This document shows positions 9,075-64,000 of a stretch of 64,000 nucleotides of DNA, one piece after another. The notes under the pieces are model-generated. The model saw only the letters and a program-made list of their open reading frames with translations. It ran no database searches and was not told the DNA's origin. The stretch comes from Mizuhopecten yessoensis. Taxonomy: Eukaryota. Position numbers and translations under genes: made by a program. Location: NCBI RefSeq assembly GCF_002113885.1, contig NW_018406089.1:198351-262350 (forward strand), given 5' to 3'. Each line of letters opens with the position of its first letter. Position 1 is the stretch's first letter.

Positions 9075-9252
9075 TAGTGCTTATTGGACACTGTCATAGT
9101 GCTTATTGGACACTGCCATAGTGCTTATTGGACACTGCCTTAGTGCTTATTGGACACTGCCTTAGTGCTTATTGGACACTGCCTTAGTTCTTATTGGACA
9201 CTGCCTTAGTGCTTATTGGACACTGCCTTAGTGCTTATTGGACACTGCCATA
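9075..9252. repeat. 22-bp minisatellite (tagtgcttattggacactgcct) x8
   Basis: Direct periodicity. Confidence 0.9.
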
Positions 9253-10812: not shown

Positions 10813-13800
10813 CTACCTTCTCATTCCTGGGGGCGGTCCTGAAGAAAAAATAATTGCACATAAGGACCTTTTCTTCAACATTATTTTCTATAGAAGACTG
10901 CTATCCGTTATTCTTGATGAACCAAGTTAATGATGAGCAAATCCGAACAGTGATATTTTCCCAGCTGAATTTGGGACCTTATAAAGATAATTTCAGCTGT
11001 ATTTTCTCAAAATAATTGCAGAAATCACTTTATTTTCCTCAAGTCATGTTTTCTGTGATGTGTTCCCAAAGTGACAAGGCACAGGCCCCAGTAAAAAAAA
11101 AGACAGAAAAAATTACTGCCTAAATATTAGTTGTTTATTTGCAAGATTTGTTACAAACACAATCATTTATAATTAATTAATCAGAAAATGACTAATCTAA
11201 CCACTAGGTACTAAATATGTTATTATAACAAAAGCTAAAATACGGTCATCATGATTTACTTACCCCTCATCATACCAGGAGGTGGTCCTCTCATACCTGG
11301 CCCACCTCGTCCTCCCATCGGTGGTCCTCGCATACCCATCATGCCTGGTGGTGGACCCCCTCGCCCTGGGGGACCTGGGGACAGAATAATCAAATTATAT
11401 GCAATACTGGTTTTTGCAAACTGTTTTCAAACAGGTGGAGTACTTTTTATGTAAAAGGGTTGGATGGGTTGAATCAAGATGCTGATCCTCACCATCTAAG
11501 GATAGTTTTATGGGATGCTGGTGAAAACCCACCACTTAGCATAGGAGATGTCCTTTGACAGTTTTTTCACAAGGGTTTAGGATGGATTTTCAGCCTTTCC
11601 ATGATCAGGTATTACAGTTTATTAATTACAAACAATAAAATTATTAGCTAATGTTCTTTTGCTGTACATGAGCTACAGAAAGTTATGGTACTTTGGTGTC
11701 TTGTGTGCATTTCACAGGGACTTGATGGATGTGATTTTTTTCCTTTTTTCTTCTTACTTAGATATATTTTGACAATGTTTTAATCAAAAGTGGCAAATCT
11801 CTGAAAGAATAATAATGCTGCAGTTTCAATCCTGTGTAATACTTGCATGAACCTGATGTTTTGCTATCAATTTTAACGTTTATTCATAAACTGTTCAACT
11901 CTGAAATACATGATGCAGTGCTCCACCTGGATTTTTTCTCCCATGAATTTCATGAGAGGGGGATATTTTGAATTTTCAAGCGAAACGAAACAGTGAGCGC
12001 CAAAAATTTTGTTTGAACATGTACGTTTTGGATAAATTTATTCCTATATTTTCTTTGCATTTTAGTCTCCATTTTTTCTGCATATTATGTTTTAACCAAT
12101 CAGAAAATGCCTTAAGGATGTCTGGCTACACAACATTAAATGTTTTAAAACTCTAAAATCTGAAAGGATACAAAATATTAACAAAATCACAAACCACATT
12201 TGACTAGATTTTTTTAATTTTCCATGGCTACATCTATTTCTTAAAAATAACTCTCGATTTAGTATTGTGCCACCCCTTCAGGGCTTAGATTGCTGTTTCA
12301 TTCAAGAATTTGTAGGATATATTTAGCTTAAATTGTCAGAATACTGTCCTAAATCTATTTATTCTACGTTAGGCATATTGAAGTCTGGATCATCCTAACA
12401 CTTCACTTGACTTACTGTACTTCCACTTTGAATTCGCATGAGCAACGATATCATTAGTTTTAATGTTTAAATTGTGTAAACCCAGAAAATATGCAATTCA
12501 AAGACAGACATTCAATCCCATTTAGAGAAATTCAGTGCAATATTTTTTGAAAAAGCAGGGTAAATGTTGTGGCCCAGAGTGATCCCTGATAATGTTAAGT
12601 TTATTCAACCGACCTCTCATTTGTGGTGGTGCAGACATTGTGCTGCGGTTAGGGTTCATCATCTGTGAGCCAGGCCCGCCAACGCCTCTGACTGGACCCT
12701 GTAGACCCTGGTGAGGTCCTCCACCCATTCCACGTCCTGCTGCCCGACCAATACCAGCGCCTGGTCCAGCACCAGAGAGGGGCACTCGAGCAATACCTTC
12801 CTGTATAAGATATTCAATGGATTATTTTTACCATATCAATATCAATTCTATACAAATTTAACATAGCATACAAACAGTATATATTGTGTCTGATTTTTTT
12901 TTTTCAACAAATGCCTTTGCTACTTGATAAATTAATAGATGACATGATTATTTAATCACGATGTACTCGGAAATCCTGGACTCATTTACAATTTTGGAGA
13001 ACCATCCTGTAAGAATTAATTACAGGACAATGGGACTCATAAATATTTTTTAAATGATATGCACATGCAAAAAACTATCATTAAATAACTAAAGATAACA
13101 TGTCAAAAAGTGTTAAACAAAAAACAGTGTCATTCTTTCAAAATTGTGCCCAACCTGTCATTAAATAGAGACAGAAAATGTATAGGTCAAATATAAGAAA
13201 TTAAGAATATTGATTTTAGGGTGCAAGATACATAATCGTCTGAATGTTTTGTTGTTGCATACCCTTTTCCTTAATTTGTTTTTTACTTACTTACTGCCCA
13301 TTACGCCCAGTGGCATGTGGGGCAGCAACGAAATTTGTTTTTTACATACTGTTTATTATACTTTTTTATCTGAACAAACAAACTTCTGTACCTCAGCTGG
13401 AGGTGGTCCCTCTACAGTCATGGAGACCAGGTGTTCCCCTCGCAGTAACACCAGACCTAGAACCCTCTTCTCCTCCTTCTCACCACTTTTACTGCTCTTT
13501 GGCTTTACTTTCCTGAACTCGTCGCAATCTCCGAGGATGAGATTCATGTGTTTGTCAAATGCTTTGAATGTTCCAATAAATGTGCGGCTATCCTGCAGGG
13601 TGCATCGCATCCTGTAGTTGATGTGCTGCAGCATCTTCGAACTCCTACCCACCGTCTAGGAAAATGCAAATTACCATAATTTCTAACACTGTGTTACTTC
13701 GCAGAAATACATGATTTTCTTAATACAATATAAAGCGATACATATCAATTAATATCAATCCGTGTTTTAGTAGAATTGCTTTATTTGCAAACTCATCTTT

Positions 13801-21417: not shown

Positions 21418-24400
21418 ATGGCGGCGTTTTCACGTTCTGGAGCAGAGCAAGAAGTAAGACAGCGCTTAATTCCAGAAAATGAGCCAGAATATGACCAGAG
21501 TTTACCATACGGCGGTAAAGTGTACCTGGCCCGCAAAAAGAAGGCCGATCCATGGCACATTCGGATTGCAGAGGTTTGTGTGTTTGCTGTTATGCTCGCG
21601 AGTGATGGAATAACTTGTTAAAGCTGTGACTCAGTTCTACTTCAAATTTCTAATCGTATATTACAGTGAATTATTTATTTATTATAATGTTAATAAGCAA
21701 AATACCAACAGACTAAAAGGCAATAGCATGACCCGCTTGTAGACATATTGTTAACGTTAAACTGTTATATGAACCAACCAGTGTCTTAATTATGATAATG
21801 ACCGCGCTAGGCGGCGACGTTTTTGACTACGTCATGTCAAGCGACCACCGGGTCATGAACTCTGGGGTATTTTCCTCATTTAAATGTGATTTACGAAGTA
21901 CTGTTGAGCTTATGGTATGGTACATGTTTCGTTCGTCGTCCATCTGTCAACTTTACCTTTGAATAACTTCTTAATGACAGCTAAATGGAGGATATTTGAC
22001 CAAATGGAGTGTTATAACATTTCGTCAAATACATGACCTTGACCTTCTCTCATGGTCACAGGGGTCAAATATGCAACTTTTAACGACATCAACCTAATGG
22101 CAATATTGCTTTTTCTTTATTAACTTTTTCTCTGAAACTTGGTGATGAATATCAACCTTATTTGGTTGGAATCATTCTCACAAGTTAGGGATTCAAAATT
22201 GCATCAGTTTTCTGGAAGGGCTAAAGGGTGGGACCAGGGTGACTCTAGGGTGTAGCTTCACTTTAAGAAACTTGGTTCATAACTTTAAAACGGTTTAAAT
22301 CCCCACCCCATTACTATATATATATATTACTGTGCATAAAGAGACAAATACAATCATGATATTTGAATTGACCATTGGGTCTGACCCCACCTGGAGGGAC
22401 TTAAATTCTGGGTCACAACTTGGAAACAGTTAAAATCTCCTTCCTATCACCATATAAACAATTGCAGAGTATAAAGAAACAAATACACATATGCTACCAG
22501 GATTGACACAAGGTCTGGCCCCACCCATGGAGACTTACTTAGTTCCTGGTTCACATCATAGAAACATTTGAGTTCCCACCACATAATCATATATACAACT
22601 GCAGCACATTAAGAGACAAAAACATTCAATTAACCCTGTGGTCAGGCCCCACCTGGAGGGACTTAGTTTCTGGGTCACAACTTGGAAATTGTTGACATGA
22701 TCACTGAAATATTGAGGCAAGCGATGCAGGCCTTCAGGGACTTGTGGTTTTGTTTTGTTTCTTTTATGTGATGAGTGCCAATATTAAGTCAGGTGACAGT
22801 AATTGGACGACACAAAAAGCAAGTGAAATTTACAGAAAGTACATTACATAGATTATACAGAGGGAAAAAAGTATTTTAAGAAAACATATGTCCCAAAAAA
22901 TGACATTAAAAGAACCTTATTCACATCCTTATAGAAAATTTATTCTGAAAGTATTCCTTTTCAGGCTTTGATCATCATTTTGACCCTTTCCTTTGCCATT
23001 TATGCATATTACTACTTTGACCACCTCCATTTCCATGTCACATATGCATATGGTTACCTTGGTTACCCCCAGGCCCAGCACCAGGTGGGACAGCGGTATC
23101 TACACGGTAAGATCATAACAATTAGTATACTTAAGAAGGATATATGCTGTGTAATGTGTGATACATTCATGCTTGTGATTGGTGTTGGGTTATCTCCCTT
23201 GAATAATGAGCATTACCAATTAATTCAGAATTGCTTAATTGCTTTTCATAGTGCCAATAACAATGTGCAAGATTCTTTGATGTGTGTAACATAATGGCTA
23301 ACAGGATATATAAATATGTTACCAAGGGTATGTCAAAATGTAGTTGCTCATGTGGTTTACAAATGCAATGTGTTTTAGTCAAAGGTCAACTTAGAGCAAT
23401 GGCCGAATCAAATGGTAACATGGGCTATAATGGGAAAAACAGTTTAAGAATCTTCTTCCTAAGTTTTATAGAATTTCAGATCCTGATATTAAGCAAATGA
23501 ATTACCTGGAATAGAGTACTCTAAAGTTTCTTCATATCAATGACCTTGACCAATTTTCAAGGTCACATGGATTAACACTGGTATGTTTCTAATGTATGGA
23601 GCTGGGGTACTTGGATATCTCATAAAGACCAGCATGTAAATCTTTTTCTTAAATATTGTTTTTATGTCAAAGGTCACAACACTGTCAAGGGTCAAATGTT
23701 AACGTAGGTTTTAATGGATAAAATGTTTTAAGAATCTTCTTCTTAAGTTTATAAGGCCTAGGGTCTTGATGTTAGCTTCCACTTTGTTGAAGGACTAGGA
23801 TTGTTTTAGTTGTTTCTAATTCTGTTGCATTTTGCTCAGGAATGACTTTGTATTTTTGTAGGTACAGTGTATAAATATAATTCTTTGGAATTTAAACAGT
23901 AAGGTCAGTAATATTTTGTTGTTCTTATTTTCCAGGAAAAGGAGTGGAAAAACACCATCAGAAAGCAGTGGAATGGTTCAGGTAGGATTACAACAGAGTA
24001 TCAGTAGTTGGTTCTGTAAAATGGGACTGAGATCTTAATTGACTTGCGCCACACTTAAAATAAAGGTCCAAACCTAAGTACTTAGAGAAAAATGTAAGGT
24101 GGTTGGGCAGGTGACCTAAGACCACCAAAGTCTTCTCTAAAAACAACTCATGTTAATTTTGTCTTTCAAGAAATGCCATAAACACATAAAACAAACTGCA
24201 TTATACCAAACATTAGACAGTTATCTTTAAACTTTAAACATGGATTTTTTTTTATGAAATTTAAAGGGATATGAATTTAATTTTGCTATTTTTTATTCTT
24301 CAAAGAATGGATAATGAAACTTTTGAAATTTATGTACAATTTTTTTTAAAAACTTTTCCTTCTTCAAAATGAAGTAGAGATGGTTAATTAACCTGTATTC

Positions 24401-33800: not shown

Positions 33801-36800
33801 AATTCTCCAAGAGCAACAAAATACCGAAGCTTGACAGATTTATATTTGTTGAAAATATCAAATTCACAAAATTTTGTGTTTAAAGTTTGATGGAAATGAA
33901 CACAATTTGTATATTACAAAGATTCATTCAACTTTTTAGTTTCAACAGTGGGAGATTTACAGTCTTCATTTCATCTCAAACCATTTGAAATTTCACACAT
34001 ATAGCAATTAAATGTAAGAGCTACTTTAGCCACTAGCCTTGGTATGCCAAGGCCAGTAATTCTACCTGTGGGCAAGTTCATTTTGTAAGAAACAAGCCCT
34101 TATAGATGGGCTAATAAACTTGCGCCTAACATGAATATCCGTATGACACAGTTAAATTGTTTCAAAAAGGAATAAAATATATGCTAATGTTTTTGAAAAC
34201 ATTTTGATAAGGGGCTGGTTGGTGTCAAATTCATGTGGTTCAGTGAGTCAATTTATCATCAAATATCTTAAAGTTGACACCTGTATTGTTGGCATCAACA
34301 ATCAAATAAGACAATCAATGTGATAAAATTGAACCTGTAAAAGACTACAATCCTGTAGTGTAAGTGATGTATTTGTTACATAATTTGGTTATATGATCTT
34401 ACAGAAATGGTCACAATGTAAGTGGATGGCAATGTCGCATTTAATTGCATGAATAGCATAGGAGTTTTCTTTGTTGTTTGATAATTATGACCAAACTTTC
34501 ACTTGGTGTCTTTTTAGCAATGACTAGCAACACATGTGCCAAGGCATCAGTTATGGTAGGACTAGTTCCAAAGGTTTTATATTTAAGATTTGAAGTTAAT
34601 TTCAAAGGTAAGGATATTATGAATTATCCACAATATTATTTCTCTACCAGGATAAAAGACAGCTTAATTTTGTTACAATCTAGCTATTCCATGTTTGAAT
34701 ATTAAGTTGAGTTAAACTAAAGTTGACTAACTACCCAATAAATGGAACTAATCTCATAGCAAGACACACACTGACTTCAATGAATTACAAAGTTAACTTT
34801 CTTCTGAGAATTTATTTTAGAAACACAGTGCATTATTTACCATGTAAACTTCGAAAGTATAATAAAGTATACATATTACCACATGTTACCTATTGCTATG
34901 AAATTTTACAATACATATATATGTATACATTAGCACAGTCATAATGACATGCAGCACCATGTGTTGCTGCAATATGGATTTATTGAATACACTAAGGCAG
35001 ATATGAGTAATATACTTATATAAGTCAGTGTAAGCCTTTGGATAGTTACACAAATCAATCGTTATCGTGAACGTAATATAACATGTATATTTACCTGGTG
35101 CAACCATGATTTCATTCTTTTTTGACCGGACACGTAGAAATGTGAGGTCATTTTGGGGATCAATATCTCGCACTGCACCACGTGCCTTCTGCGTCAGTAG
35201 GGTCAGTGAGTTACAATATTGCACCGTTGTGGAATTATCAAGAGTTGTTCTTATTGGAATTCCTGGGGGGAAAACATTATATATGAATCTTTATGAAAAT
35301 AATTCATGTAAACTGAATAACAAAATAAACCAGAAGACCTGTTTATTATTATCATGTAATCAATATGATAAGATTTTTTTCCGATTTAAATTTCGTGAAA
35401 TGGCAGCAGATTGCCATAACCTGTCAAACATAACATGTGTATCAGTTGTAACCTTTTTTTTCTTAATTAAGCAGACAAGTCAATAAAATATATTTTCAAG
35501 CAACTTTGGCTTTGCTTTAAACTTTATACTTAAAAGTTTTATCATAATCTCATACAATACAAATATATAATTAACTGACTTCAACTTTAATAAGTGGTGT
35601 AGAATGTACAATAAGCCTGCAGCTGAACCTTTTCAGTTTTAAATACTACTCCATCTGTTTTTAAGCTACAGGTTTAGCTGTTCACAATCAAATTGACAAA
35701 GCCATTATCACTACTAATATCAATGCTCATCTAATCTGTCATTATTTTCAGGTAATATCAATGCTCATCTAATCTGTGGAGTGTCCTTACTTTCAGGTAA
35801 TATCAATGTTCGTCTAATCTGTCCTTACTTTCAGGTAATATCAATGTTCGTCTAATCTGTCCTTACTTTCAGGTAAACTGTCACATTGTGGATCACCCAA
35901 TGTAATGGCATTCAGAACACAAATTGTATTTATCACAAGACTGCATGAACTCATTTGTTTGCAGTACATGCTATACTTGTATGTACCTCTAACATGTGAT
36001 ATCAGTATCATCATACCACGTACCAGTTCGATTCTAACTTCAGTGTTTTCTTTAGGCAATATCTATATATTATATATACAAAAAACATCCCAAGTTCTCT
36101 TGTGATGTTAAGTTAAATACAAGAGAAATGACATAAAGAGTTTTTTATTAATTCCCTCATGAACCTCTAAAGAGGTGGAAGTATTGTGTACATGAAGTCA
36201 TGGCATTCTGAATCATATAAAACTATTTGCATGAATCAAGATGATGACAAAGTAATGTGTTAAAAAAGATCTTTACCTAAAACATCATTACTTGTTTCCC
36301 AAAACTTAAATGAAATAGAAAGTTATTATAAAGTATTAAATAAAAAAATATATCCAAATCATCAATTGATCGTAACAGTTAAGTACTGTGCTATAGACTT
36401 CTTACCTTCAGAATTAACGACAATTGTGCCGATCACACCCTTGTGGGCCTGTATCCTTTTTAGGGTTTCTTCTACCGATGTCGCCTAGCAACAAAAAAAA
36501 TTAGCTGAATTAATGCCACGTGAAAGAAGATGTACCAATTGTTATATTGATACTTAATTGTTTTGGTACAGTGTGTTCTTTTGACTACGGCTACATTGCT
36601 GGAAATGATGACTGTTGACACATTTGAAGATTAAAATTTATTAATAAAAAGCATTTTTGAGAAGAGTTGTTATAACTTATTCATTTTAGAAACTGTTAAA
36701 TTTGGGTCCTGTCCTTATTGTTAAAATTGGGTAAAGCGCATTGGGTATTGGATCATATTTGTCTTTTTAGTGTACTAATTTTTAATATTGTAGCCAGATA

Positions 36801-50007: not shown

Positions 50008-52340
50008 AACAAGAGGCCCAGAGGGCCTGTATCGCTCACCTGGATACCTAAGCAATCATGGCAAACTATTCTCCAAATGAGATCAAGGGAATATGCCAGA
50101 CGACCCCAAGGCCAATCCTTGTAGCATAGCTATATTAGATTTTTCATGCCCAGCAATTTTATGTATGGTTATGGGGTGGGGATCTCAACTGTTTCCAAGC
50201 TTTGACTCAGAAACTAGGTCCCTAGAGTTGTGGCCAGACCCCAGGATCGATTCTAATATCGTGACTGCATTTGTCTCTTTTTGCCAAGCATTTGTATATA
50301 TAGTTTTGGGGTGGGGATCTCAACCGTTTCAAAGTTATGACCCAGGGGCCAAGTCTGCAAGGGTGGGGCAGACCCTGGGATCAATTCTAATGTCATGACT
50401 GCATTCGTCTCTTTATGCCCAACAATTGTATATATAGTTTTGGGGTGGGGATATTAACCATTTCAAAGTTATGACCCAGGGGTTAAGTCTCCAAGGGTGG
50501 GGCAGTCCCCAAGGCCAACCTGGAAGCATATGTGCAATCATCTCTTTATACTCAGCAATTGTATATATACGGTTATAGGGTGGGGCTCTCAACTGTTTCC
50601 AAGCTGTGACTAAGAAACTAGGTCCCTAGGGGTTCGGTCAGACCCCAGGGTCTATTCTGATATCATGATTGCATTCGTCTCTTTATGCCCAGCATTTGTA
50701 TATATAGTTTTGGGGTGGGGATCTCAACCGTTTTAAAGTTATGGCCCAGGGACTATGTCTCCAAGGGTGGGGCCAGACCCTAGGGACATCCTGGAAGCAA
50801 ATGTGCATTCTTCTCTTTATACTCAGCAATTGTATATATGGTTATATGGTGGGGATCTCAACCATTTCCAAGTAATACATTTTATTGGCCCCACCCCTTA
50901 GCCCGGGGGGTCAGCCCCACCATTTGTACAATTTTGAATCCCTGCCTCCCATGAATACTTCCGACCAAATATGATCAATATCCATGGCATAGTTCTGCAG
51001 AAGAAGTCATTTATAGCAATATAACCAAATTGCCCCCTTTTGGCCCCGCCCCTCAGCCCCCTGGGGGGTCAGCCCAACCGTTTGTACAATTTTGAATCTC
51101 CACCACCTAGAGATGCTTCCAGTCAAATAAGGTTGATATCCATCACTTAGTTCCAGAGAAGAAGTCACTTAAAGCAGTATAGCCAAATACCCTTTTTGGC
51201 CCTGCCCCTCAGCCCCCTGGGGGGTCAGCCACACCATTTGTACAATTTTAAATCCCTGCCTCCCAGGAATGCTTTTGATCAAATATGATTGATATCCAGT
51301 GCACAGTTCTACAGAAGAAGTCGTTTGTAGCAATATAGCCAAATGGCCCCCTTTTGGCCCAGCCCCTTAGCCCCCTGGGGAGTCAGCCCCTTCGTTTGTA
51401 CAATTTTTAATCACCATCACCTAGGGATGCTTCCAGTCAAATATGGTTGATATCCACTTCTTAGTTCCAGAGAAGAAGTCACTTAAAGCAGTATAGCCAA
51501 ATCCCCTTTTTGGCCCCGCCCCTAAGCCCCCTGGGGAGTCAGCCCCATAATTTGTACAATTTTTAATCACCATCACCTAGGGATGCTTGCAGTCAAATAT
51601 GGTTGATATCCACTTCTTAGTTCCAGAGAAGAAGTCGCTTAAAGCAATATAGCCAAATTGCCCCATTTTGGCACGCCCTCAGCCCCACCATTTGTACAAT
51701 TTTTAATCACCATCTCCTAGGGATGCTTGCAGTTAAATATGGTTGATATCCTCTTCTTAGTTCCAGAGAAGAAGTCACTTTAAGCAGTATAGCCAAATCC
51801 CCTTTGCGGCCCCGCCCCTAAGCCCCCTGGGGGGTCAGCCCCATCATTTGTACAATTTTGAATCCCTGACACCTAGGGATGCTTGCAGTTAAATATGGTT
51901 GATATCCACTTCTTAGTTCCAGAGAAGAAGTCACTTTAAGCAGTATAGCCAAATACGCTTTTTGGCCCCGCCCCTACTCCCCCTGGGGGGTCAGCCCCAT
52001 CATTTGTACAATTTTGAATCTCCACCACCTAGAGATGCTTCCAGTCAAATATGGTTGATATACCATTCTTAGTTCCAGAGAAGTCACTTAAAGCAGTATA
52101 CCAAAATCCCCTTTTTGGCCCCGCCCCTACTCCCCCTGGGGGGTCAGCCCCATCATTTGTACAATTTTGAATCTCCACCACCTAGAGATGCTTCCAGTCA
52201 AATTTAGTTTAATTCCAACCAGTGGTTAAGGAGAAGAAGTCGTTTAAAGAAATTGTTGACGTACAGACGGATGACCGACGGACGACGGACGCCACGGTAT
52301 GGCATAAGCTCACCTTGGTCCTTCAGACCAGGTGAGATAA
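50008..52340 (+). mobile_element. 2.3-kb HINE carrying two different internal tandem arrays
   Basis: AACAAGAGGCCC..CGCTCACCTG start; ~120-bp-type units at about 50090-50870; about nine ~155-bp units at about 50880-52250; (gacg)n tract; 3' hairpin. Confidence 0.85.
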
Positions 52341-53704
52341 TTAGAGGGGCTCTTACAAACAAAATGAAAACAAAGTGGAAATCAGGAAGGGCTAATTCCA
52401 GTTTTAAGGGTCCAAAGCCCCCAGGGTCCCTCCTCCAGTATTATGAGTAAAGCACCATCCTGGATTTTTTTCTCTGTTTTTCTTTACTTTTTGTAAAGAT
52501 AATGTGAAGCCCGCTTTTGTTTCATAGTATTTATAATAGAATTAAGAAAATGGAATGTGCTTTCTTGGAAACATTTGAAAATAAATTCATGAAATTGAAG
52601 AAAAATGTCTAAATCTCCTTTTGAATGCATCCCAAATATAATTATGCAAGGCAAAAGACAAAAATTGAGCATAAGTAACTTTATGTAACAACATACATGC
52701 TGAATAGTGTAATAGCTTAAGAATAAGAGGGAGTGCCTAATTGGCAATCTAACTATTCCATCTATGCAGAATAACCCAGGGATGAATTCTATAGTTAAGC
52801 AACGTTGAGCGTTGTCAGTGGCTGGGTGCATGCCAACACACTACATTTGGTGGCAGCGGTGGGAATACTTAACACCGGTGGAATAAAATGTGTTTAGACC
52901 GATTTCCTGGTAGCCAACACAGTAAAGAAGCACCAATAATGTCATTTCATTTGTATACAACACAATAGACTGACTAAAGGTGCTCTTTATAATATTTTCT
53001 TTCAAATACAACATTATATAAATTGCATTCGACCAATGCAGCATATGATGATACATGATACTTGTACATTAATGTGCAGCCCACAAAAATAACACCATTA
53101 AATATAATTACAAATATAACAAATTTTCTTACAATTGGACATTACTTCACCGAATCATTCTCAAGTATAAAAGATTGTTTAAATAGATCCTCTTGACATG
53201 TCCATTAAAATGGTGTCCTACTTATTAAATTTGACACAGTACGGTATGGCAATCAACATGGATTAAGTTTAATCGGATCATAAATGTAAAAATGGATACA
53301 TGCATATATACAGAACTAGATGTTGTATTGTGTGGCATTTACAGATGCATGTCCCATAGGACAAGGTCACAACATGAGGTCAAAGGTCAACCATTCTAAT
53401 GCTGGTCTAGATTTTAACTTTTGAGTATATTTCCATCAAAATGGATGGATGTGTAAATTCTGACTAGAAACGAGTGTAAAGTGCTGTTTAAAGGTCTGTG
53501 TCCCTATGTCAAGGTTATTGTAAGGGGTCAAAGGTTAAATAAGCGTTGTATCTGTCCAGACTGATGAATATTTACTCATTAACTTGTATTAGAGTGTTTA
53601 TCAGAACAGTGTATTTGACAAACAGAGTATAGAGCATTCCTGTATACATGTTGATGATGTAAGGTGTGTGTAAATTCTAAAAATTACTAACACAAGTAAA
53701 CTAC

Positions 53705-53920
53705 ACCAAATGTAAATTACCATTACTGGTAAATAAACCTTAACAGGTAAAATTACCAATGCAGGTAATCACCATCACATGTAAATTCTCATTACAGGTA
53801 AATTACCTGCACAGGTAAAATTACCAATACAGGTAAATTACCAACACAGGTAAAATTACTTTACAGGTCAATTACCATTACAGAGGTAAATTACAAACAC
53901 AGGTAAATTACCATCACATG
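53705..53920. repeat. Degenerate ~20-bp tandem repeat (acaggtaaattacc...)
   Basis: Repeated caggtaaa(a)ttacc motif. Confidence 0.65.
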
Positions 53921-54402
53921 TATATGTCTTTGGTAACAGTTCACAATTTCTGCTTCTGAATGATAATGAGGCATGTTTTATGCAAAACACAAGGATCTGG
54001 CAATATGCTGCAAAACTGACATTTCTGAACACTGACTTTATCATGACTTAGTACCCTACTGTTGTGGTCAGTGTTATTTACTGGCTCACATGAGTAATTA
54101 TCATAAAACATATTTATCTCCTTACGTGTTTGTATGACTATTTGTGTTAATTGCTTTTGATCACAGTAAAGTTTTTAAGTATCCAGATATTTTGACTTTC
54201 AATTTCTATTATGACTAACTGGCCATTTGTTTTGGTCAGTGTGATTAAAATATTGACCAGTGATTGGTTTGTTTTATATTCTCCTTCAATCAGCATGACT
54301 TACTGGGGATTCCGAATGGATCACTGTGTCACTGTATATTGAAAATATTAGCCCTTCATTTTCTATTGGTCAGCATGGCTTATGTACTGACCACCGTGTT
54401 GG

Positions 54403-57400
54403 TCAGTGTGATTTATTGACCCATCCTGAATCTGTCACTGGGCTAGTAGGTCTGTGAGGAAAAAGCAGAAGCAGCAAAGCTATGAGTCCCCCGGTTATAT
54501 AAATAGTAATCACAGTTGTTTCTCTGGGAAGGTAGCACTGCTCCACAGCAAACTCATCTGGGGACAGCACCACCTGCAAGTGTACAACGTATATGGATAA
54601 ACAAACTGTTTTCATAAGAATAAGATACTCGGCCTAACTTATTTCTAAAGCATCCAGTGAGTCAGTGATTTACACTCCAGTATATATATCTGGGTGGCCT
54701 TTCACCAAGGCAGACAGGGTTTGTTTCCCTGATTGGATGTGACAAGGTATGGGGTCACCTACCCGACCACGGGGGGTTTTCTCCAGGTAATCTGGTTTCC
54801 TCCCACACTTAGATCCCCCGCGCTTACATCCAAGCCAATAGGAGTGGTTAATATAAGTTGAAATAAGTTGTTTCATAATTGGAGTAAAAATAAATAAATT
54901 TATATTTATATATATTTAAGTATTTCTCATAAATTTAGAAAAATCGTTTGATACGTAAGTGTTATATTAGCTGTTTTAGGTAGCAATACAGTACAAGGAA
55001 CATCCGAACATCAGAATTAATGCTGATCACCAATGTTAGGATTATAATATCACATTTACACTAACTCTATGACCAACTGTCAGAGTAATTGTCTTATATA
55101 TGTAAACAGGATCTGTGATGTTCACAAATTGGGAACTGTAATAAAAAATAGAAAAAAGAAATAAGACCTGCAAGCATTTGAGCCTTGAAAGAAGTCATCA
55201 TAGAAACTGGAATAGCACAATATGCAGTGGATTAAGGTTTCTTTGGTAACTAACCTGTAAAAATGTAGGATTGTTTTTGTTGCGCCAACTAAAGGAGGCA
55301 ACTGTCCACTCTGGAACAGCGTTGTCATGGAGATGATAGCATCCATGGTGTGTGTGAGCACTTAAGATAAGGCGAGGTCTGATCCAATCAAAAACCTTTG
55401 TTAAACAGAAAGATTATTATTATTATAAACATTCATTGTAGTAATCTGATATTCACCAAGTTTGATAATTAAATTCTGGCAGTTGAAAAAACCCATAATA
55501 GAGGTTTATATTTTTTTCAATGCCTTTGCTAGGGTTCAAATTTGGGACCTCTGGTATGCTCAACTCATTAAAATCAGAAAAACTTAAGTGACATTTGTTT
55601 TAAAATGTGACAATTGTATTTTGAAGTAAAAGAAAAGATGATTTAAGTAATGTGTGGCTAGAAAAATATCTGTGATATTAATATACAGTATTATGACAAC
55701 TGCTTAATTCAAACCAAATATACATACTGTAAATATAACAGTGCATCAGGCTTTATAACACTGAGGACAGTATATCAAATACCTGATGGCTAGATTCTTC
55801 AGACAGGCAGTCCCATTTCTCCTTGAAAGGAATATCCTTTTCATCAGGGGGTGCAGAATCTGGTAAACTACAGTTTGCATCTGAAGGCCGGTACATAGGA
55901 AAATGCTAAAAAAGAAACAAAATTAAAAATAAACACTTCTCTATTATTATAGATTTTAGCAGAAATTCCTAAGAAATTCAATGTTTACAAATCATTTCAT
56001 TTTCAAAGTATAATTTTTAACTATTTAAGGTAATATGCTACCTTGAACATTTTAACTGATTTGTTAAAGGTTTTTCTCTCTTAAAACTACTTAATTGACA
56101 TTAGTTACACATACTTATAACTAACAAATACTTAGACACTGTAAAGAATGCTATCTGTCACATTCCTATTTACTTTTCATATGAGTCATTAGTTTTGAAA
56201 TTTATAATAATTTACAATTTTTATCTCGTGTGGAGCGGCTTGGCCGAGAACATGCATGTCAAAGTAAATAAACAGGTTAACATACATGAGGACAGGGACA
56301 GTCCTGTGTCCAATTCACACTTGTAATAACTAATATCACAAATGTTTTTTTACTTACCTGTAGTAATATTGGTGGAGAGTACGATAGTTTATCCATGGCA
56401 TCACATATGGGTGGTGAGCTTTTTTGGGAAGTTTGTCCCTAGGAAAGAGAAGAAGCTATCAATATCAGTATCTACCTGTGGTATATGTTTTGGGAAGTTT
56501 GTCCCTAGGAGAGAGAAGAAGCTATCAATATCAGTATCTATCTGTGGTATATGTTTTGGGAAGTTTGTCCCTAGGAGAGAGAAAAAGCTATCAATATCAG
56601 TATCTACATGTGGTATATGTTTTGGGAAGTTTGTCCCTAGGAGAGAGAAGCTATCAATATCAGTATCTACCTGTGGTACATGTTTTGGGAAGTTTGTCCC
56701 TAGGAGAGAGAAAAAGCTATCAACATCAGTATCTACATGTGGTATATGTTTTGGGAAGTTTGTCCCTAGAAGAGAGATGAAGCTATCAATATCAGTATGT
56801 ACCTGTGGTATGTGTTTTGGGAAGTTTGTCCCTAGGAGAGAGAAAAAGCTATCAACATCAGTATCTACATGTGGTATATGTTTTGGGAAGTTTGTCCCTA
56901 GAAGAGAGATGAAGCTATCAATATCAGTATGTACCTGTGGTATGTGTTTTGGGAAGTTTGTCCCTAGGAGAGAGAAGCTATCAATATCAGTATCTACCTG
57001 TGGTGTATGTTTTGGGAAGTTTGTCCCTAGGAGAGAGAAAAAGCTATCAACATCAGTATCTACATGTGGTATATGTTTTGGGAAGTTTGTCCCTAGAAGA
57101 GAGATGAAGCTATCAATATCAGTATGTACCTGTGGTATGTGTTTTGGGAAGTTTGTCCCTAGGAGAGAGAAGCTATCAATATCAGTATCTACCTGTGGTA
57201 CATGTTTTGGGAAGTTTGTCCCTAGGAAAGAGAAGAAGCTATCAATATCAGTATCTACCTGTGGTATGTTTAGGGAAGTTTGTCTCTAGGAGAGAGATGA
57301 AGCTATCAATATCAGTATGTACCTGTGGTATATGTTTTGGGAAGTTTGTCTCTAGTAGAGAGAAGAACCTATCAATATCAGTATCTACCTGTGGTATATT

Positions 57401-60400
57401 TTTTGGGAAGTTTGTCTCTAGTAGAGAGAAGAACCTATCAATATCAGTATCTACCTGTGGTATATTTTTTGGGAAGTTTGTCTCTAGTAGAGAGAAGAAC
57501 CTATCAATATCAGTATCTACCTGTGGTATATTTTTTGGGAAGTTTGTCTCTAGTAGAGAGAAGAAGCTATCAATATCAGTATCTACCTGTGGTGTATGTT
57601 TTGGGAAGTTTGTCCCTAGGAGAGAGAAAAAGCTATCAATATCAGTATCTACATGTGGAATATGTTTTGGGAAGTTTGTCCCTAGGAGAGAGAAAAAGCT
57701 ATCAACATCAGTATCTACATGTGGTATATGTTTTGGGAAGTTTGTCCCTAGAAGAGAGATGAAGCTATCAATATCAGTATGTACCTGTGGTATGTGTTTT
57801 GGGAAGTTTGTCCCTAGGAGAGAGATGAAGCTATCAATATCAGTATGTACCTGTGGTATGTGTTTTGGGAAGTTTGTCCCTAGGAGAGAGAAGCTATCAA
57901 TATCAGTATCTACATGTGGTATATGTTTTGGGAAGTTTGTCCCTAGAAGAGAGATGAAGCTATCAATATCAGTATGTACCTGTGGTATGTGTTTTGGGAA
58001 GTTTGTCCCTAGGAGAGAGAAAAAGCTATCAACATCAGTATCTACATGTGGTATATGTTTTGGGAAGTTTGTCCCTAGAAGAGAGATGAAGCTATCAATA
58101 TCAGTATGTACCTGTGGTATGTGTTTTGGGAAGTTTGTCCCTAGGAGAGAGAAAAAGCTATCAACATCAGTATCTACATGTGGTATATGTTTTGGGAAGT
58201 TTGTCCCTAGAAGAGAGATGAAGCTATCAATATCAGTATGTACCTGTGGTATATGTTTTGGGAAGTTTGTCTCTAGTAGAGAGAAGAACCTATCAATATC
58301 AGTATCTACCTGTGGTATATTTTGTGGAAAGTTTGTCTCTAGTAGAGAGAAGAAGCTATCAATATCAGTATCTACCTGTGGTACATGTTTTGGGAAGTTT
58401 GTCCCTAGGAGAGAGAAGCTATCAATATCAGTATCTACCTGTGGTATATTTTGTGGAAAGTTTGTCTCTAGTAGAGAGAAGAAGCTATCAATATCAGTAT
58501 CTGCCTGTGGTATATGTTTTGGGAAGTTTGTCCCTAGAAGAGAGATGAAGCTATCAATATCAGTATGTACCTGTGGTATGTGTTTTGGGAAGTTTGTCCC
58601 TAGGAGAGAGATGAAGCTATCAATATCAGTATCTACCTGTGGTATATTTTTTGGGAAGTTTGTCTCTAGGAGAGAGAAGAAGCTATCAATGTCAGTATCT
58701 ACCTGTGGTATATGTTTTGGGAAGTTTGTCTCTAGTAGAGAGAAGAAGCTATCAATATCAGTATCTACCTGTGGTATATGTTTTGGGAAGTTTGTCCCTA
58801 GGAGAGAGAAGAAGCTATCAATATCAGTATCTACCTGTGGTATATGTTTTGGGAAGTTTGTCCCTAGGAGAGAGAAGAAGCTATCAATATCAGTATCTAC
58901 CTGTGGTATATGTTTTGGGAAGTTTGTCCCTAGGAGAGAGAAGAAGCTATCAATATCAGTATCTACCTGTGGTATATGTTTTGGGAAGTTTGTCCCTAGG
59001 AGAGAGAAGAAGCTATCAATATCAGTATCTACCTGTGGTATATGTTTTGGGAAGTTTGTCCCTAGGAGAGAGAAGAAGCTATCAATATCAGTATCTACCT
59101 GTGGTATATGTTTTGGGAAGTTTGTCCCTAGGAGAGAGAAGAAGCTATCAATATCAGTATCTACCTGTGGTATATGTTTTGGGAAGTTTGTCCCTAGGAG
59201 AGAGAAGAAGCTATCAATATCAGTATCTACCTGTGGTATATGTTTTGGGAAGTTTGTCCCTAGGAGAGAGAAGAAGCTATCAATATCAGTATCTACCTGT
59301 GGTATATGTTTTGGGAAGTTTGTCCCTAGGAGAGAGAAGAAGCTATCAATATCAGTATCTACCTGTGGTATATGTTTTGGGAAGTTTGTCCCTAGGAGAG
59401 AGAAGAAGCTATCAATATCAGTATCTACCTGTGGTATATGTTTTGGGAAGTTTGTCCCTAGGAGAGAGAAGCTATCAATATCAGTATCTACCTGTGGTAT
59501 ATGTTTCGGGAAGTTTGTCCCTAGGAGAGAGAAGAAGCAATCAATATCAGTATCTACATGTGGTACATGTTTTGGGAAGTTTGTCCCTAGGAGAGAGAAG
59601 AAGCTATCAATATCAGTATCTACCTGTGGTATATGTTTTGGGAAGTTTGTCCCTAGGAGAGAGAAGAAGCTATTAATATCAGTTTTTATATGTGGTACAT
59701 GTTTTGGGAAGTTCGTCCCTAGGAGAGAGAAGAAGCTATCAATATCAGTATCTACCTGTGGTGTATGTTTTGGGAAGTTTATCCCTAGGAGAGAGACGTC
59801 TACAACTCACTGATATTTATTTCACAAGTGTTACAACATCACCAGTGTCAAAGTTATGGCCGGGGAATCAAGTCACTAGGGGTGGGGCCAGAACCCAGAG
59901 TCAATTCTAATATCATGACTCTGTTTATCTCTTTATGCCCATCAATTATATATATGGTTATAGGGTGGGGATTTTCACAGTTTCAAAGTTATGACCTAGG
60001 GACCAAGTCTTCAAGGGGAGGGGGCCCAGACCGGGGAGCCATCCTGTAGTAATGTGTATTAATTGTCTCTTTATGCTCAAGCATTGTATATAAGATTGCC
60101 AGGTGGGGATCTCGATAATGTCAAAGCTAGAAATTCCTTTTGAAATAACCCACTCCTGCCACTCAGACTGAGGGGTCAACCCGTCACTGGTTAAAATTAC
60201 ATGAAGGAATCCCCACCAAACTAAGAATGCTCCCAACAAAATATATGTTGATACCCATCATTTCGTTCTAGAGAAGAAATTGATTAAAACAATATTGCCA
60301 AATTACCCTTTTTTGGCCCCACTCCTCAGCCCCACAGGGGACAGCCCTTCAATTTGTACAATTCTGAATCCACACTATCTGAGATTGCTTCCAACCAAAT

Positions 60401-63400
60401 TCCAGAGAAGAAGTTGCTGTAAAGCAATATGGCCAATTGTTCAAATAAAGGGACTGGGCTTAGGGCTGGCAGGGAGAGAAAGGGTAATTTATATGTGGGT
60501 ATTATTTATTCACCTCTAACCAATCAAGCAGTGGGTTATATGTGGGTAGTATTTATTCACCTCTAACCAATCAAGCAGTGGGTTATATGCGGGTATTATT
60601 TATTCACCGCTTACCAATAAAGCAGTGGGTTATATGTGGGTAGTATTTATTCACCTCTAAACAATTAAGCAGTGGGTTATATGCGGGTATTATTTATTCA
60701 CCGCTTACCAATAAAGCAGTGGGTTATATGTGGGTATTATTTATTCACCGCTTACCAATTAAGCAGTGGGTCATATGTGGGTATTATTTATTCACCTCTA
60801 AACAATTAAGCAGTGACTTATATGTGGGTATTATTTATTCACCACTTACCAATAAAGCAGTGGGTTATATGTGGGTAGTATTTATTCACCTCTAACCAAT
60901 TAAGCAGTGGGTTATATGTGGGTAGTATTTATTCATCTTTACACAATTGAGCAGTGGGTTATATGTAGGTTTTATTTATTCACCTCTACACAATTAAGCA
61001 GTGGGTTATAGGTGGATTTTATTTATTCACCTCTAAACAATTAAGCAGTGGGTTATATGTGGGTAGTATTCATTCACCACTTACCAATAAAGCAGTGGGT
61101 CATATGTGAATTTTATTTATTCACCTCTAAACAATTAAGCAGTGGGTTATATGTGGGTAGTATTTAATCACCACTTACCAATAAAGCAGTGGGTTATATG
61201 TGGGTAGTATTTGTTCACCTCTAACCAATTAAGCAGTGGGTTATATGCGGGTACTATTTATTCATCTTTACACAATTAAGCAGTGGGTTATATGCGGTTA
61301 TTATTTATTCAACTCTAACTAATCAAGCAGTGGGTTTTAGGTGGGTATTATTTATTCACCGCTTAACAATTAAGCAGTGGGTTATATGTGGGTAGTATTT
61401 ATTCACCTCTAACCAATGAAGCAGTGGGTTATATGTGGGTATCACTTATTCACCTCTACACAATTAAGCAGTGGGTTATATGTGGGTATCACTTATTCAC
61501 CTCTACACAATTAAGCAGTGGGTTATATGTGGGTATTACTTCTTCACCTGTAACTAATTAAGCAGTGGGTTATATGTTGGTATTACCTTTTTTTTTTATA
61601 TATATTTGTTTTATTTTCAAAAGAATTTTTTCAATACAGTGACAATAATAATGGATCAGTAATTCATTCAGATCATATAATAACCTATTTGTCACCAATC
61701 ATCTTTCATATCACCATTCATACCATACAGATCATGCCAAAAGAAATTTGTATCACTAAAGACTGCATATGGATAGGTATTATTTCATTTAATATCACAC
61801 TGTATTGCTATAAGGAAAAAGGAAGGATAAAAGGAAAGAAAGAGAAGCTGGTAAGAAACAAAAAAGAGAAAGAAGAAAAGATAAAGACAGATATCAGAAC
61901 AAGCATGTCATGGAAGGAAGTCAAACCAGAGCTAGATACTAATTAAAGTTAAGTACAGTATGTAACAGAATTGTTACTGAATAATTAAGATATCAGCCTA
62001 AATCATGTCAGGTTTTAGGCAAAATCCACTAATTTCATCCATTTCTTCCATTCATTTAAAACAAAAGGAGACAAGGATCACTTTTACTATATGAAATACA
62101 TTTTTGAACCACATGGTTTTCTTTTATTACATTAGCTAGAGCCATAACAGAGAGAGTACCATGTATAGTTCTGGTTCTGTAGATATAAGATTTGATTAGA
62201 AGAAGAACTTCATTATCAATGCGATTGTAAATGCCTGTGTTATTTACCAAACCAAATAACAATGTTTCTTTATTAATATGTAATGTAATTGTTAGTGCAT
62301 TTAACAACCTTTCAAAACTTGCCAGAAAATCCTGAACCTCACCACATTCCCATAACATATGCACTATTGTCTCCCTTCCTCTATTACAGAAATTACAATT
62401 AGGATTGTTTGATAAGCCTATTGTGGGTATTACCTTTTCACCTCTAACCAATTAAGCAGTGGGTTATATGCGGGTTATATGTGCGTGTTATTCACCTCTG
62501 CACACTTGAGCTGCCATGAGATTTCTTCCAATGAGGTGACTGCCTTGGCACACAACTTACATCCATCCCCCTCCATCGCCATGCTATTCATCAACACAAA
62601 CAGGTTTCCATTGAACTCAAACAGCTGGACGAGAGGCGAGGAAAACGCTTTCTCAAAACGTCTATGTTTATGTTCATCCATCCTGTAAAAAGAAAAAAGT
62701 TGCACCAATACCATCCTTACCTTAATTTAATTATGTCTGACAGACCAATGTTGTACTAAAATAAATGTTCCCCTCTGTCATCATTCTAATGAAAACTTAA
62801 ATTATTTCTTAACCCTATATTTGCAGACAAAGAGGTGTAGTATTAATGTGTATATGATGTGGTTCAAATGTTGTCAGGATTGTATTTTGCACTGCTGAAA
62901 ATCAGTTACTTCTGCAGAGGAGAAATTAGGAGTTCTATGTCCCAAGATGAAACTGGTTTTGAGACAGTGCACCTTTAACCTACTAGAAACTCTGTGAAAA
63001 TTCATAATTCTCAACAGGGACTCAATAAAACATTCTGTTTTGTTAAACTGCAAAAATCTCAACAATGAAATGACTATCATTGTCAAAATGCAGGTCAAAA
63101 TCAGTAGTACTGCATTTAAACAATTAAACTATTTGCCTTTTAATAATTACTAGTACATTGCATTAACATGTCTTAAAAGTATTAACCATAAAGAAAACAG
63201 TGATACAAATTATACTAGTTAAAATCTTGCGTATGATACTGGTATTTATCTGACTTTGACAGACTTTGGCATGATGATAATTTGTATGCTGGCATTTTAA
63301 AAACTGTTTATTTTGGGAAAAAATCTGTGACAATGCCGATTCTACACTAAATATGTCTGTAACGGAACCCGAGACTAAACAATTTCCGTAGTAGATCAGA

Positions 63401-63722
63401 AACAGTCTGAGATTAAGTATCACATGCGTACGTAACCTCCTCCACATGAAAGCCATTCTGGTCTCAGTGGAGTATAACATATAGATAGACAGATAGAACA
63501 ATGTCTGTAGCAGAATAGGAGAGACTTAAAGACAACTCCTGAGAACAAAACATGCCAGTGCCTTTCGTTGTTGTACTTACATATAGTGAAATCCAATGTC
63601 ATGATTGCCTACCAGAACTTTGGTAGCTGTACCTTTTGGTGTTGCAAACATTTTTTGGAATCTGGCAACATCCTTTTTGAACTCTGCATCATTGGCCCAC
63701 TTGCCCTCATCTAGCAAATCAC
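54403..63722 (-). CDS. MPPE1: Metallophosphoesterase 1 (PGAP5), 3' six coding exons; 5' part lies right of the window
   Basis: Exons 63581-63722, 62496-62682, 56358-56438, 55783-55905, 55255-55395, 54403-54573, phase-consistent. Motifs GDLLDEG, GNHDIGFHY, NSMAMEGDGC, PILLQHFPMYRPSDANC, PRLILSAHTH, SFSWRNKNNP, CYLPRE plus a C-terminal TM. The next donor (GTAAGT) is at 63995-64000. Confidence 0.96.
54690..54900 (+). mobile_element. V-SINE-like element, same family as 527-763
   Basis: Shares GCCTTTCACCAAGG, AAGGTATGGGGTCA, TTTCCTCCCACA and the AAAT tail. Confidence 0.72.
56422..59796. repeat. 66-bp (63-bp variant) minisatellite, about 51 copies, each containing the MPPE1 3' splice site
   Basis: Minus-strand unit: gtagatactgatattgatagcttcttctctctcctag|GGACAAACTTCCCAAAACATATACCACAG. 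The terminal unit runs directly into the real exon 56358-56438. Confidence 0.95.
59835..60435 (+). mobile_element. Internal fragment of the 50008-52340 HINE family
   Basis: Shares both core unit types; no termini seen. Confidence 0.6.
60490..62498. repeat. 47-bp minisatellite (about 23 copies at 60490-61587 plus 1-2 at 62422-62498) containing the MPPE1 5' splice site; split by a LINE
   Basis: Minus-strand unit AGAG|GTGAATAAATAATACCCACATATAACCCACTGCTTAATTGGTT; the real donor is GCAGAG|GTGAATAAC at 62495. Confidence 0.92.
61592..62421 (-). mobile_element. 5'-truncated L1/Tx1-like LINE (ORF2 C-terminal CCHC region, 3' UTR, polyA)
   Basis: CNFCNRGRETIVHMLWEC zinc knuckle and a frameshifted EWKKW end, T-run at 61588-61597, ~17-bp TSD TGTkGGTATTACCTTTT (61575-61591 / 62422-62438). 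Confidence 0.85.
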
Positions 63723-64000
63723 CTGTGTGTGGAATGCTTGTGTTGTTTAGTTTTAAGATATTAGCTCAGAATGGTAGCACAAGAGTTCCGTACATATATA
63801 AAATTTTAAGAAGATTTCTTTTACAATTGTACCTTACACAACTAGTGATTTACTGTGGTTAATTTATATTTTAAGTGTATTTTTAGAAAGGAATAATAAA
63901 ATATCTCTTTGACTCAATTACAAATAAACTAGAAAAATGTATCTATAATTTCATCTCAGCATATAAACCATTTCTTTTCATGTTTGTGCTTCAGACTTAC

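What the first reader, a model, noticed from the sequence alone, without database searches (positions are those of the whole stretch)
56422..62498. One MPPE1 intron with both its donor and its acceptor amplified into separate minisatellites
Seen: intron 56439-62495 begins with a 47-bp array whose unit contains the true donor context AGAG|GTGAAT (about 25 units, roughly half intact). It ends with an unrelated 66-bp array whose unit contains a CTGAT branch-like motif, the pyrimidine tract, TAG and the first ~16 nt of the next exon (about 51 units). Only the outermost pair gives the conserved MPPE1 frame. Read-through from a decoy acceptor gives GQTSQNIYHR* in most units, and use of a decoy donor gives EVNNTHI*. 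Inference: the spliceosome must choose among about 75 look-alike sites, so the arrays may act as copy-number-dependent NMD rheostats, splicing-factor sinks or recursive-splicing ladders. Two independent splice-site-centred expansions on one intron suggest a splicing-linked mutational mechanism or selection.
Basis: partly seen in the sequence, partly recalled or inferred. Interest (0 to 1): 0.8.

Follow-up and report, generated by a model that had tools for sequence, protein, structure and literature searches.

The report
Splice-site minisatellites flanking one MPPE1 intron
One intron of a scallop-like MPPE1 gene starts and ends with tandem arrays that copy its own splice sites (24 spare donor positions, 51 spare acceptors); this is real, but it is a new example of the already described "mirage" minisatellites and is most likely a tolerated by-product of a very repeat-rich genome.

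Summary
On the minus strand, intron 56439-62495 of a single-copy MPPE1-like gene begins with a 47-bp array and ends with a 66-bp array. The 47-bp array has 24 decoy donor positions: 21 keep GT and 11 are exact AGAG|GTGAAT. The 66-bp array has 51 decoy acceptors, each with a branch-like motif, a pyrimidine tract, TAG and 17 nt of exon. Both units occur nowhere else in the 988-Mb assembly. Every decoy leads to a premature stop.

The functional reading is not supported. Decoy signals vary no less than other unit columns. A distant orthologue has the same intron (408 nt) without arrays. In a 200-kb sample, tandem arrays cover about 13-15% of the sequence, so random seeding predicts thousands of junction-spanning arrays and about 12-15 doubly hit introns genome-wide. 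Donor-like motifs are not enriched in array units.

The kind is known: amphioxus "mirages" and human F7, IFI6, CBS and ABCA7. The most likely mechanism is neutral expansion. The exon-proximal donor and the only properly exon-defined acceptor are used, and NMD clears errors. No RNA data were available.

The scan has unverified notes of similar arrays elsewhere in this genome. Verdict: new member of a known kind, modest interest.

The parts
63583..63723 (-). MPPE1-like exon (GDLLDEGKW...GNHDIGFHY), two exons upstream of the acceptor array
   Evidence: tblastn against named metallophosphoesterase 1 proteins gave 53-60% identity. Weak Pfam Metallophos hit, E=0.002. 180 library hits.
62496..62682 (-). 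Upstream exon of the intron. It ends ...AAG TGT GCA GAG in phase 0. The true donor GT is at 62495-62494.
   Evidence: Sequence read directly. Colinear with residues 164-227 of the Pelodiscus MPPE1 protein P0033. Single copy in the genome.
62423..62499 (-). First ~1.6 units of the 47-bp array: the true AGAG|GTGAAT junction, a 12-nt internal duplication, and decoy donor AGAG|GTGAAA at 62441
61588..62422 (-). 3' fragment of a non-LTR retroelement inserted into unit 2 of the donor array. It has a poly(A) run at 61588-61597 and a ~16-nt target-site duplication (AAAAGGTAATACC[C/A]AC).
   Evidence: At least 142 candidate copies in the genome, up to 95% identical. Weak zf-RVT hit. Boundaries read.
60489..61587 (-). 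Main 47-bp array with 23 decoy donor positions. Three units also carry G|GTAAGT and four carry G|GTAAGC 8 nt upstream.
   Evidence: TRF, unit table, column variability. Locus-specific.
59797..60488 (.). Intron middle: short unique flanks around an old dispersed, satellite-like repeat
   Evidence: 2446 first-look candidates at ~70% identity. Same family as 50143-52204 and 22277-22536 in the window.
56422..59796 (-). 66-bp array with 51 decoy acceptor modules (branch-like CTGAT, pyrimidine tract, TAG, 17 exon-like nt). 38 of 51 also have CAG|GTA[GC]AT 29 nt downstream. The last unit is the true acceptor.
   Evidence: TRF. Unit tables. 27 unit types, with a run of 10 identical units and repeated 'IO' dimers. 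Locus-specific.
56358..56438 (-). 81-nt exon in phase 0-0 (GQTSQKSSPPICDAMDKLSYSPPILLQ), followed by the consensus donor CAG|GTAAGT
   Evidence: Sequence. Colinear with P0033 residues 228-253, directly after residue 227 of the upstream exon. The same exon and phase occur in the orthologous contig L019.
55780..55905 (-). Next MPPE1-like exon (HFPMYRPSDANC...)
55258..55398 (-). MPPE1-like exon with the SAHTHH motif
   Evidence: Single copy in the genome.
54406..54579 (-). Last coding exon (CYLPRE... and a hydrophobic tail)

Best explanation
These are two independent, lineage-specific 'mirage'-type minisatellites. Each began as a tandem duplication of a short segment spanning one exon-intron junction of a formerly short MPPE1 intron.
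- The acceptor seed was 49 intron nt plus 17 exon nt.
- The donor seed was 4 exon nt plus 43 intron nt.

Each then grew inward by unequal exchange or slippage. The genome makes minisatellites at very high density, so the arrays are most likely neutral or slightly deleterious passengers, not regulators.

Productive splicing would survive in three ways:
1. The donor next to the exon, the most 5' copy, is taken first, as shown experimentally for the human F7 IVS7 array.
2. Only the last acceptor copy is followed by a normal-sized 81-nt exon with a consensus donor (CAG|GTAAGT). Each decoy is followed by a donor-like site only 29 nt away, too close for exon definition.
3. Any slip to a decoy brings an in-frame stop upstream of several junctions, so nonsense-mediated decay should remove it.

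Shown here: the anatomy, locus specificity, frame consequences, lack of extra constraint on decoys, absence from a distant orthologue, and array density. Inferred: which sites are used, exon definition, and NMD.
For: - Arrays and registers.
- Both units occur only at this locus in 988 Mb.
- The array interior has turned over: 27 unit types, a run of 10 identical units, repeated dimers, and a unique boundary unit. A retroelement with a target-site duplication sits inside the donor array.
- All 51 decoy acceptors and every decoy donor give stops.
- There is no extra conservation of decoy signals.
- Orthologous contig L019 has the same intron position and phase, is 408 nt long and has no array.
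- The gene is single copy with intact exons, so the arrays are tolerated.
- Arrays number 36 per 200 kb and cover ~13-15% of bases. The chance expectation is ~2,600-3,500 junction-spanning arrays and ~12-15 doubly hit introns.
- Scallop genomes are reported to be rich in tandem repeats (PMC10225492).
- Precedents with silent pseudo-sites: F7, IFI6, CBS, LMNB2 and PDGF (PMC1557585), and the amphioxus mirages of both donor and acceptor type (PMC3087553, PMC3902484).
Against: - No RNA evidence was available, so use of the outermost sites is inferred from homology and frame only.
- For two arrays each of at least 1 kb on one intron, the chance expectation is only ~1 per genome. The double hit is therefore mildly improbable.
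- The density estimate rests on one contig and on an assumed 1.5-2 x 10^5 introns.
- The decoy acceptors are 65/66 identical to the true one. Three donor-array units carry a better donor (G|GTAAGT) than the true site, so silence of the decoys is not guaranteed.
- In human ABCA7, a donor-seeded array does alter splicing with its length (PMC5954066).
Confidence: 0.7

Rival explanations
1. Regulatory decoy arrays. The reiterated sites divert a copy-number-dependent fraction of transcripts into stop-containing isoforms, or soak up U1/U2AF. Array length would then tune MPPE1 output, as a rheostat or sink.
For: - All decoys are complete and lead to stops.
- Decoy core signals are identical to the true sites.
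- In human ABCA7, a VNTR beginning at a donor changes isoform ratios with length, and one retained unit gives a premature stop (PMC5954066).
- Two proximal pseudo-sites are used in IFI6 and CBS (PMC1557585).
Against: - Decoy signals are not better conserved than other columns.
- The arrays are absent from orthologue L019.
- MPPE1 is a housekeeping-type GPI-remodelling gene with no known need for such tuning (general knowledge).
- Array density makes a chance origin sufficient.
- F7, LMNB2, PDGF and the amphioxus mirages splice normally (PMC1557585, PMC3087553).
Confidence: 0.12
2. A junction-targeted mutational process. Something linked to splice junctions or to the AG|GT sequence seeds tandem duplications preferentially at exon-intron boundaries in this genome. 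The double hit and the many similar first-reader notes would then reflect mechanism rather than chance.
For: - Both ends of one intron are hit by arrays of at least 1 kb, against a chance expectation of ~1 per genome.
- Other first-stage notes report many junction-seeded arrays in this genome (unverified).
- Two more small arrays in this window carry CAG|GTAA.
- Mirages were thought possibly general in amphioxus (PMC3087553).
Against: - In 42 arrays from the 200-kb systematic sample plus this window, AGGTRA is at background frequency: 3 observed, 2.2 expected, rank 64 of 180. None of the 35 arrays from the sample alone has it.
- Random seeding already predicts thousands of junction-spanning arrays.
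- First readers are drawn to exactly this pattern, which is an ascertainment bias.
Confidence: 0.1
3. Assembly artefact. The arrays, or most of their copies, are over-expanded or mis-joined by the assembler.
For: - There is a run of 10 identical 66-bp units.
- Repeat mis-assembly is reported for a scallop draft (PMC12121003) and for an amphioxus mirage (PMC3087553).
Against: - There are 27 distinct unit types in a structured order and 63/64-nt variants.
- A retroelement with a target-site duplication lies inside the donor array.
- There are no N gaps.
- Both boundary units join cleanly to unique exon sequence.
- Collapse is the usual error, not expansion. Copy number may be wrong, but the existence of the arrays is not in doubt.
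Confidence: 0.05

Closest known systems
Amphioxus 'mirage' minisatellites (Adh3, TnC, globins BflGb6/BflGb9, PGBD5)
   Same: - Tandem duplications whose unit spans an exon-intron boundary.
- Both 5' and 3' boundary types exist, and many units keep AG/GT.
- Boundary units escape homogenisation.
- Normal splicing is reported (PMC3087553, PMC3902484).
   Different: - Those are in a cephalochordate; this genome is probably a bivalve mollusc.
- The copy number here is far higher: 51 and 24 against 2-6 in the globins.
- Both junctions of one intron are hit.
- Splicing was not tested here.
Human F7 IVS7 37-bp VNTR, and IFI6 6-16, CBS IVS13, LMNB2 and PDGF donor arrays
   Same: - The first monomer spans the exon-intron boundary. 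In F7 it is the last 4 bp of the exon plus 33 bp of intron; here it is 4 plus 43.
- Identical pseudo-donors follow the true one, and the most upstream site is used (PMC1557585).
   Different: - Those are donor arrays only and lie in vertebrates.
- F7 has 5-9 repeats.
- Site choice was shown experimentally there and is only inferred here.
Human ABCA7 intron 18 25-bp VNTR
   Same: - The array begins at the GT of a donor.
- A retained unit gives a premature stop.
- This is the precedent for length-dependent effects (PMC5954066).
   Different: There is no evidence here for any effect on isoforms or expression, and no acceptor array in ABCA7.
Recursive splice sites (ratchet points)
   Same: Donor-array units contain AG|GT. 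Splicing to that AG would regenerate the exact exon-end/GTGAAT junction.
   Different: - The pyrimidine tract before that AG is weak.
- Acceptor-array units read TAG|GGAC and regenerate no donor.
- This is not a member of that class.

Membership tests
Mirage-type (junction-spanning) minisatellite | Head-to-tail array with a minisatellite-size unit | tested here: met
   A 66-bp unit in 51.4 copies and a 47-bp unit in 23.3 copies.
Mirage-type (junction-spanning) minisatellite | The terminal unit spans an authentic exon-intron junction, holding both exon and intron bases | tested here: met
   The acceptor array shares 17 exon nt plus 49 intron nt. The donor array shares only 4 exon nt (AGAG) plus 43 intron nt. 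The junctions are fixed by colinearity with MPPE1 proteins and with the L019 orthologue.
Mirage-type (junction-spanning) minisatellite | Units reiterate the splice signal | tested here: met
   51 of 51 decoys keep AG with a branch-like motif and pyrimidine tract. 21 of 24 keep GT.
Mirage-type (junction-spanning) minisatellite | Made in place from the gene's own sequence, not from a dispersed repeat | tested here: met
   BLAST and pattern searches (up to 3 mismatches) of the whole assembly hit only this locus.
Mirage-type (junction-spanning) minisatellite | Pseudo-sites are silent and the mRNA is normal | not testable with these tools
   No RNA data could be reached. Records of this genome or of near ones are withheld from the contig look-up.
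Mirage-type (junction-spanning) minisatellite | Length polymorphism or instability | not testable with these tools
   Only one assembly was available.
Recursive splice site | A 3' splice site (pyrimidine tract plus AG) directly followed by GT, so that a donor is regenerated | tested here: not met
   Acceptor units read TAG|GGAC. Donor units do have AG|GT, but behind a purine-interrupted tract, TTAATTGGTTAGAG, which is inconclusive for that array.
Regulated unproductive splicing (poison or decoy element) | Decoy signals are conserved above the surrounding sequence, and the element is conserved between species | tested here: not met
   Column variability is at or above the array average. The arrays are absent from orthologue L019. 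Close relatives could not be examined.
MPPE1 / PGAP5 (metallophosphoesterase 1) | Colinear similarity across exons to proteins named metallophosphoesterase 1, including the GDxxDEG, GNHD and HTH motifs | tested here: met
   Five to six exon pieces align in order with the Tubulanus, Pelodiscus, Salmo and Neodiprion proteins. The exons were searched one by one. The joined protein was not built or searched.

The most novel reading that the evidence does not exclude
Scallop genomes carry a junction-linked process, or a tolerance regime, that places minisatellites on exon-intron boundaries well above chance. This would be a molluscan counterpart of the amphioxus 'mirages'. The MPPE1 intron would be a double hit whose about 75 decoy sites measurably lower or tune mRNA output through NMD.
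Probability: 0.1. Interest if true: 0.6.

Novelty: new member of a known kind. Interest (0 to 1): 0.3.

Why it matters
The locus is a natural experiment in splice-site choice. There are 52 near-identical complete acceptors and 25 donor positions, 22 of which keep GT, and only one pair gives a working mRNA of a single-copy conserved gene. It would extend the donor-side 'most upstream site wins' rule from human F7 to a mollusc. It would also give a rare large acceptor-side test of exon definition.

As biology of the gene itself it is probably neutral. The wider point is that in a genome with about 15% tandem arrays, junction-spanning arrays are expected in the thousands and appear to be tolerated.

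Tried and rejected
- Pfam on single exon pieces gave only a weak Metallophos hit.
- The protein Atlas gave nothing usable.
- The word-indexed protein search with the 83-aa exon ORF found nothing, because its length filter excludes full-length kin. Identity therefore came from the exhaustive representative search and the names of cluster members.
- No close (pectinid) orthologue could be reached. The best fragments were about 60-69% identical. Records of this or near genomes are withheld from the contig look-up.
The density and motif tests therefore rest on 200 kb of one contig plus the window.
- The Cañestro 2002 'mirage' paper (PMC117041) is not held. It is cited only through PMC3087553 and PMC3902484.
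- Rfam found no RNA family in 53-64 kb.
- A paralogue that could have relieved constraint was sought and not found.
- Rejected: a recursive ladder at the acceptor array, because no GT is regenerated.
- Rejected: origin of either array from a dispersed repeat.
- Considered but unsupported: a shared ancestral segment for the two units. They share only ACATATA(A)CC(C)AC, which could be chance.
- No N stretch was filled.
Full report
**What is there.** Tandem Repeats Finder reports two arrays in the stated region.
- A 66-bp unit in 51.4 copies at 56422-59796, with 93% matches.
- A 47-bp unit in 23.3 copies at 60489-61585, with 87% matches.

The gene runs on the minus strand. The upstream exon ends ...TGT GCA GAG at 62496, and the intron opens GTGAAT at 62495. 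The downstream exon opens GGACAAACTTCCCAAAAAAGCTC at 56438 after ...CTCTTTCCTAG. It ends CTACAG|GTAAGT at 56358. It is 81 nt long, in phase 0-0.

**The gene.** Single exon pieces give only a weak Pfam Metallophos hit. An exhaustive search with the GDLLDEGKW...GNHDIGFHY exon found 180 relatives. The full-length ones are named metallophosphoesterase 1 in Pelodiscus, Tubulanus, Salmo and Neodiprion.

Five to six exon pieces of the window align with these proteins in order. Residue 227 of the turtle protein ends at 62496 and residue 228 starts at the 56438 exon. The 62496|56438 junction is therefore the homology-supported one.

Exons were searched one at a time, by reference. I did not build or search the joined protein. 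The two exons tested occur once in the 988-Mb assembly, so this is a single-copy gene with intact exons.

Genome size (987.6 Mb) and contig number (82,659) fit my memory of the Yesso scallop draft. PMC12121003 gives 988 Mb as the upper size for Pectinidae. The species was not tested.

**Acceptor array.** There are 52 TAG| sites in register, 51 decoys plus the true one. The units are 44 of 66 nt, 6 of 63 nt and 1 of 64 nt. Every decoy keeps three signals:
- AG;
- a CTRAY branch-like motif 23-26 nt upstream;
- a pyrimidine tract of 75-94%.

The unit carries 17 exon nucleotides. The true acceptor differs from the consensus unit by one base in the tract. In phase 0 every decoy runs into a stop: after 10 codons in 38, 21 codons in 11, 1 codon in 1, and 294 codons in 1 (that last stop falls in the true exon, out of frame).

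Because the period is a multiple of three, the TAG of each acceptor is itself in frame. In 38 of 51 units a donor-like CAG|GTAGAT or CAG|GTACAT lies 29 nt after the decoy acceptor. The next acceptor is then only 37 nt further on.

**Donor array.** There are 24 decoy positions. 21 keep GT and 11 are exact AGAG|GTGAAT, identical to the true site from -4 to +8. Three units also hold G|GTAAGT and four hold G|GTAAGC. Only four exon bases (AGAG) are shared with the unit, the same geometry as human F7 (PMC1557585). The retained intron start reads VNNTHI*, so any decoy donor gives a premature stop.

**Intron anatomy.**
- The first ~1.6 donor units (62499-62423) are cut off from the rest by an 0.83-kb retroelement tail at 62422-61588. 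It has a poly(A) run and a ~16-nt target-site duplication. It has at least 142 relatives, up to 95% identical, and a weak zf-RVT hit. The array therefore predates that insertion and truly abuts the exon.
- The middle of the intron (59797-60488) is an old dispersed, satellite-like repeat. It has 2446 first-look candidates at about 70% identity. It belongs to the same family as 50143-52204 in this window.
- Without the arrays and insertions, the ancestral intron was short.
- A metagenome contig (L019) carries a 48-62% identical orthologue. It has the intron at the same codon boundary and phase, is 408 nt long, and has no tandem array.

**Origin in place.** BLAST and pattern searches (up to 3 mismatches) of the whole assembly find both units only at this locus. 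The 66-bp array has 27 unit types, a run of ten identical units, repeated two-unit blocks and a unique boundary unit. This is the usual signature of unequal exchange, and it argues against a pure assembly artefact. Copy number could still be wrong.

**Is it more than chance, or selected?**
- Within the arrays the decoy signals are not specially conserved. AG is invariant, but so are 33 of 66 columns. The pyrimidine tract is the most variable stretch. The donor 9-mer has the same mean variability as the whole 47-bp unit.
- A systematic 200-kb sample of another contig holds 36 arrays with period of at least 12. They cover 13-15% of the bases. This agrees with reports that tandem repeats are the largest repeat class in scallop genomes (PMC10225492).
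- If seed units fall at random, a given point lies inside one with probability 0.88%. With an assumed 1.5-2 x 10^5 introns, that gives about 2,600-3,500 junction-spanning arrays and 12-15 introns hit at both ends. For both arrays being at least 1 kb, the expectation is about one per genome.
- Donor-like AGGTRA is not enriched in array units: 3 of 42 against 2.2 expected, rank 64 of 180 permuted motifs. None of the 35 arrays of the unbiased sample has it.
- Other first-stage notes list many 'junction-seeded' arrays in this genome. I could not check those loci. Their number is in the range chance predicts.

**Mechanism (inferred).**
- The exon-proximal donor is used, as shown by mutagenesis for the F7 array. 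There, identical or even stronger downstream pseudo-sites do not compete (PMC1557585).
- The last acceptor is the only one followed by a normal 81-nt exon and a consensus donor. Each decoy is paired with a donor-like site only 29 nt away. That is below the size at which internal exons are usually definable (general knowledge).
- Slips yield stops upstream of at least three junctions, and so are NMD substrates.
- A zero-length recursive step is impossible at the acceptor units (TAG|GGAC). It is only formally possible at the donor units (AG|GT behind a weak tract).
- Three consecutive 29-nt pseudo-exons would keep the frame without a stop (hand translation). Nothing suggests this happens.

**Comparison with the known.** Minisatellites whose end unit spans a junction are described in several places:
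- Human F7, IFI6, CBS, LMNB2 and PDGF (PMC1557585).
- Human ABCA7, with length-dependent isoform changes (PMC5954066).
- Amphioxus 'mirages' at both 5' and 3' boundaries, with normal splicing (PMC3087553, PMC3902484).

This locus meets the structural criteria. Silence of the decoys and length polymorphism could not be tested. It is a new member of a known kind. It is notable for its size, for the acceptor-side array, and for hitting both ends of one intron in a mollusc.

Noticed in passing
window 53680-53922: A 17-bp array of about 12 copies whose unit reads ACAG|GTAAAT on the plus strand. It lies about 0.5 kb beyond the last MPPE1 coding exon. No exon was identified next to it.
   Followed up: partly
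window 35715-35876: A 38-bp array of 4 copies whose unit starts GTAATA and ends CTAAT...CCTTACTTTCAG. Each unit looks like a miniature intron joined CAG|GT. No flanking exon was identified.
   Followed up: no
window 9073-9258: A 22-bp array of 8.5 copies, immediately preceded by an acceptor-like TTATTTCCAG. Its gene context is unknown.
   Followed up: no
L023-L042 (contig C3070, 20 stretches of 10 kb): Minisatellites are extremely dense: 36 arrays per 200 kb, 13-15% of bases, eight of them at least 1 kb, with a median unit of 37.5 bp.
   Followed up: yes
window 59784-59830: The 5' end of the 66-bp array is a partial unit (TCTCTCTCCTAG|GGATAAAC...) that abuts unrelated sequence. The array is therefore n x 66 plus about 30 nt. 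A later deletion or a filler-type first duplication could explain this. It is unresolved.
   Followed up: no
window 60489-61585 vs 56422-59796: The two otherwise unrelated units share ACATATA(A)CC(C)AC. This could be chance or a trace of an older duplication in a very short ancestral intron.
   Followed up: no
window 13359-13655 (-): An exon-like ORF resembling an Sm-B/SNRPB core protein (judged by eye).
   Followed up: no
window 50143-52204 and 22277-22536: Satellite-like arrays of 134/156-bp units, belonging to the same abundant family as the repeat in the middle of the MPPE1 intron.
   Followed up: partly
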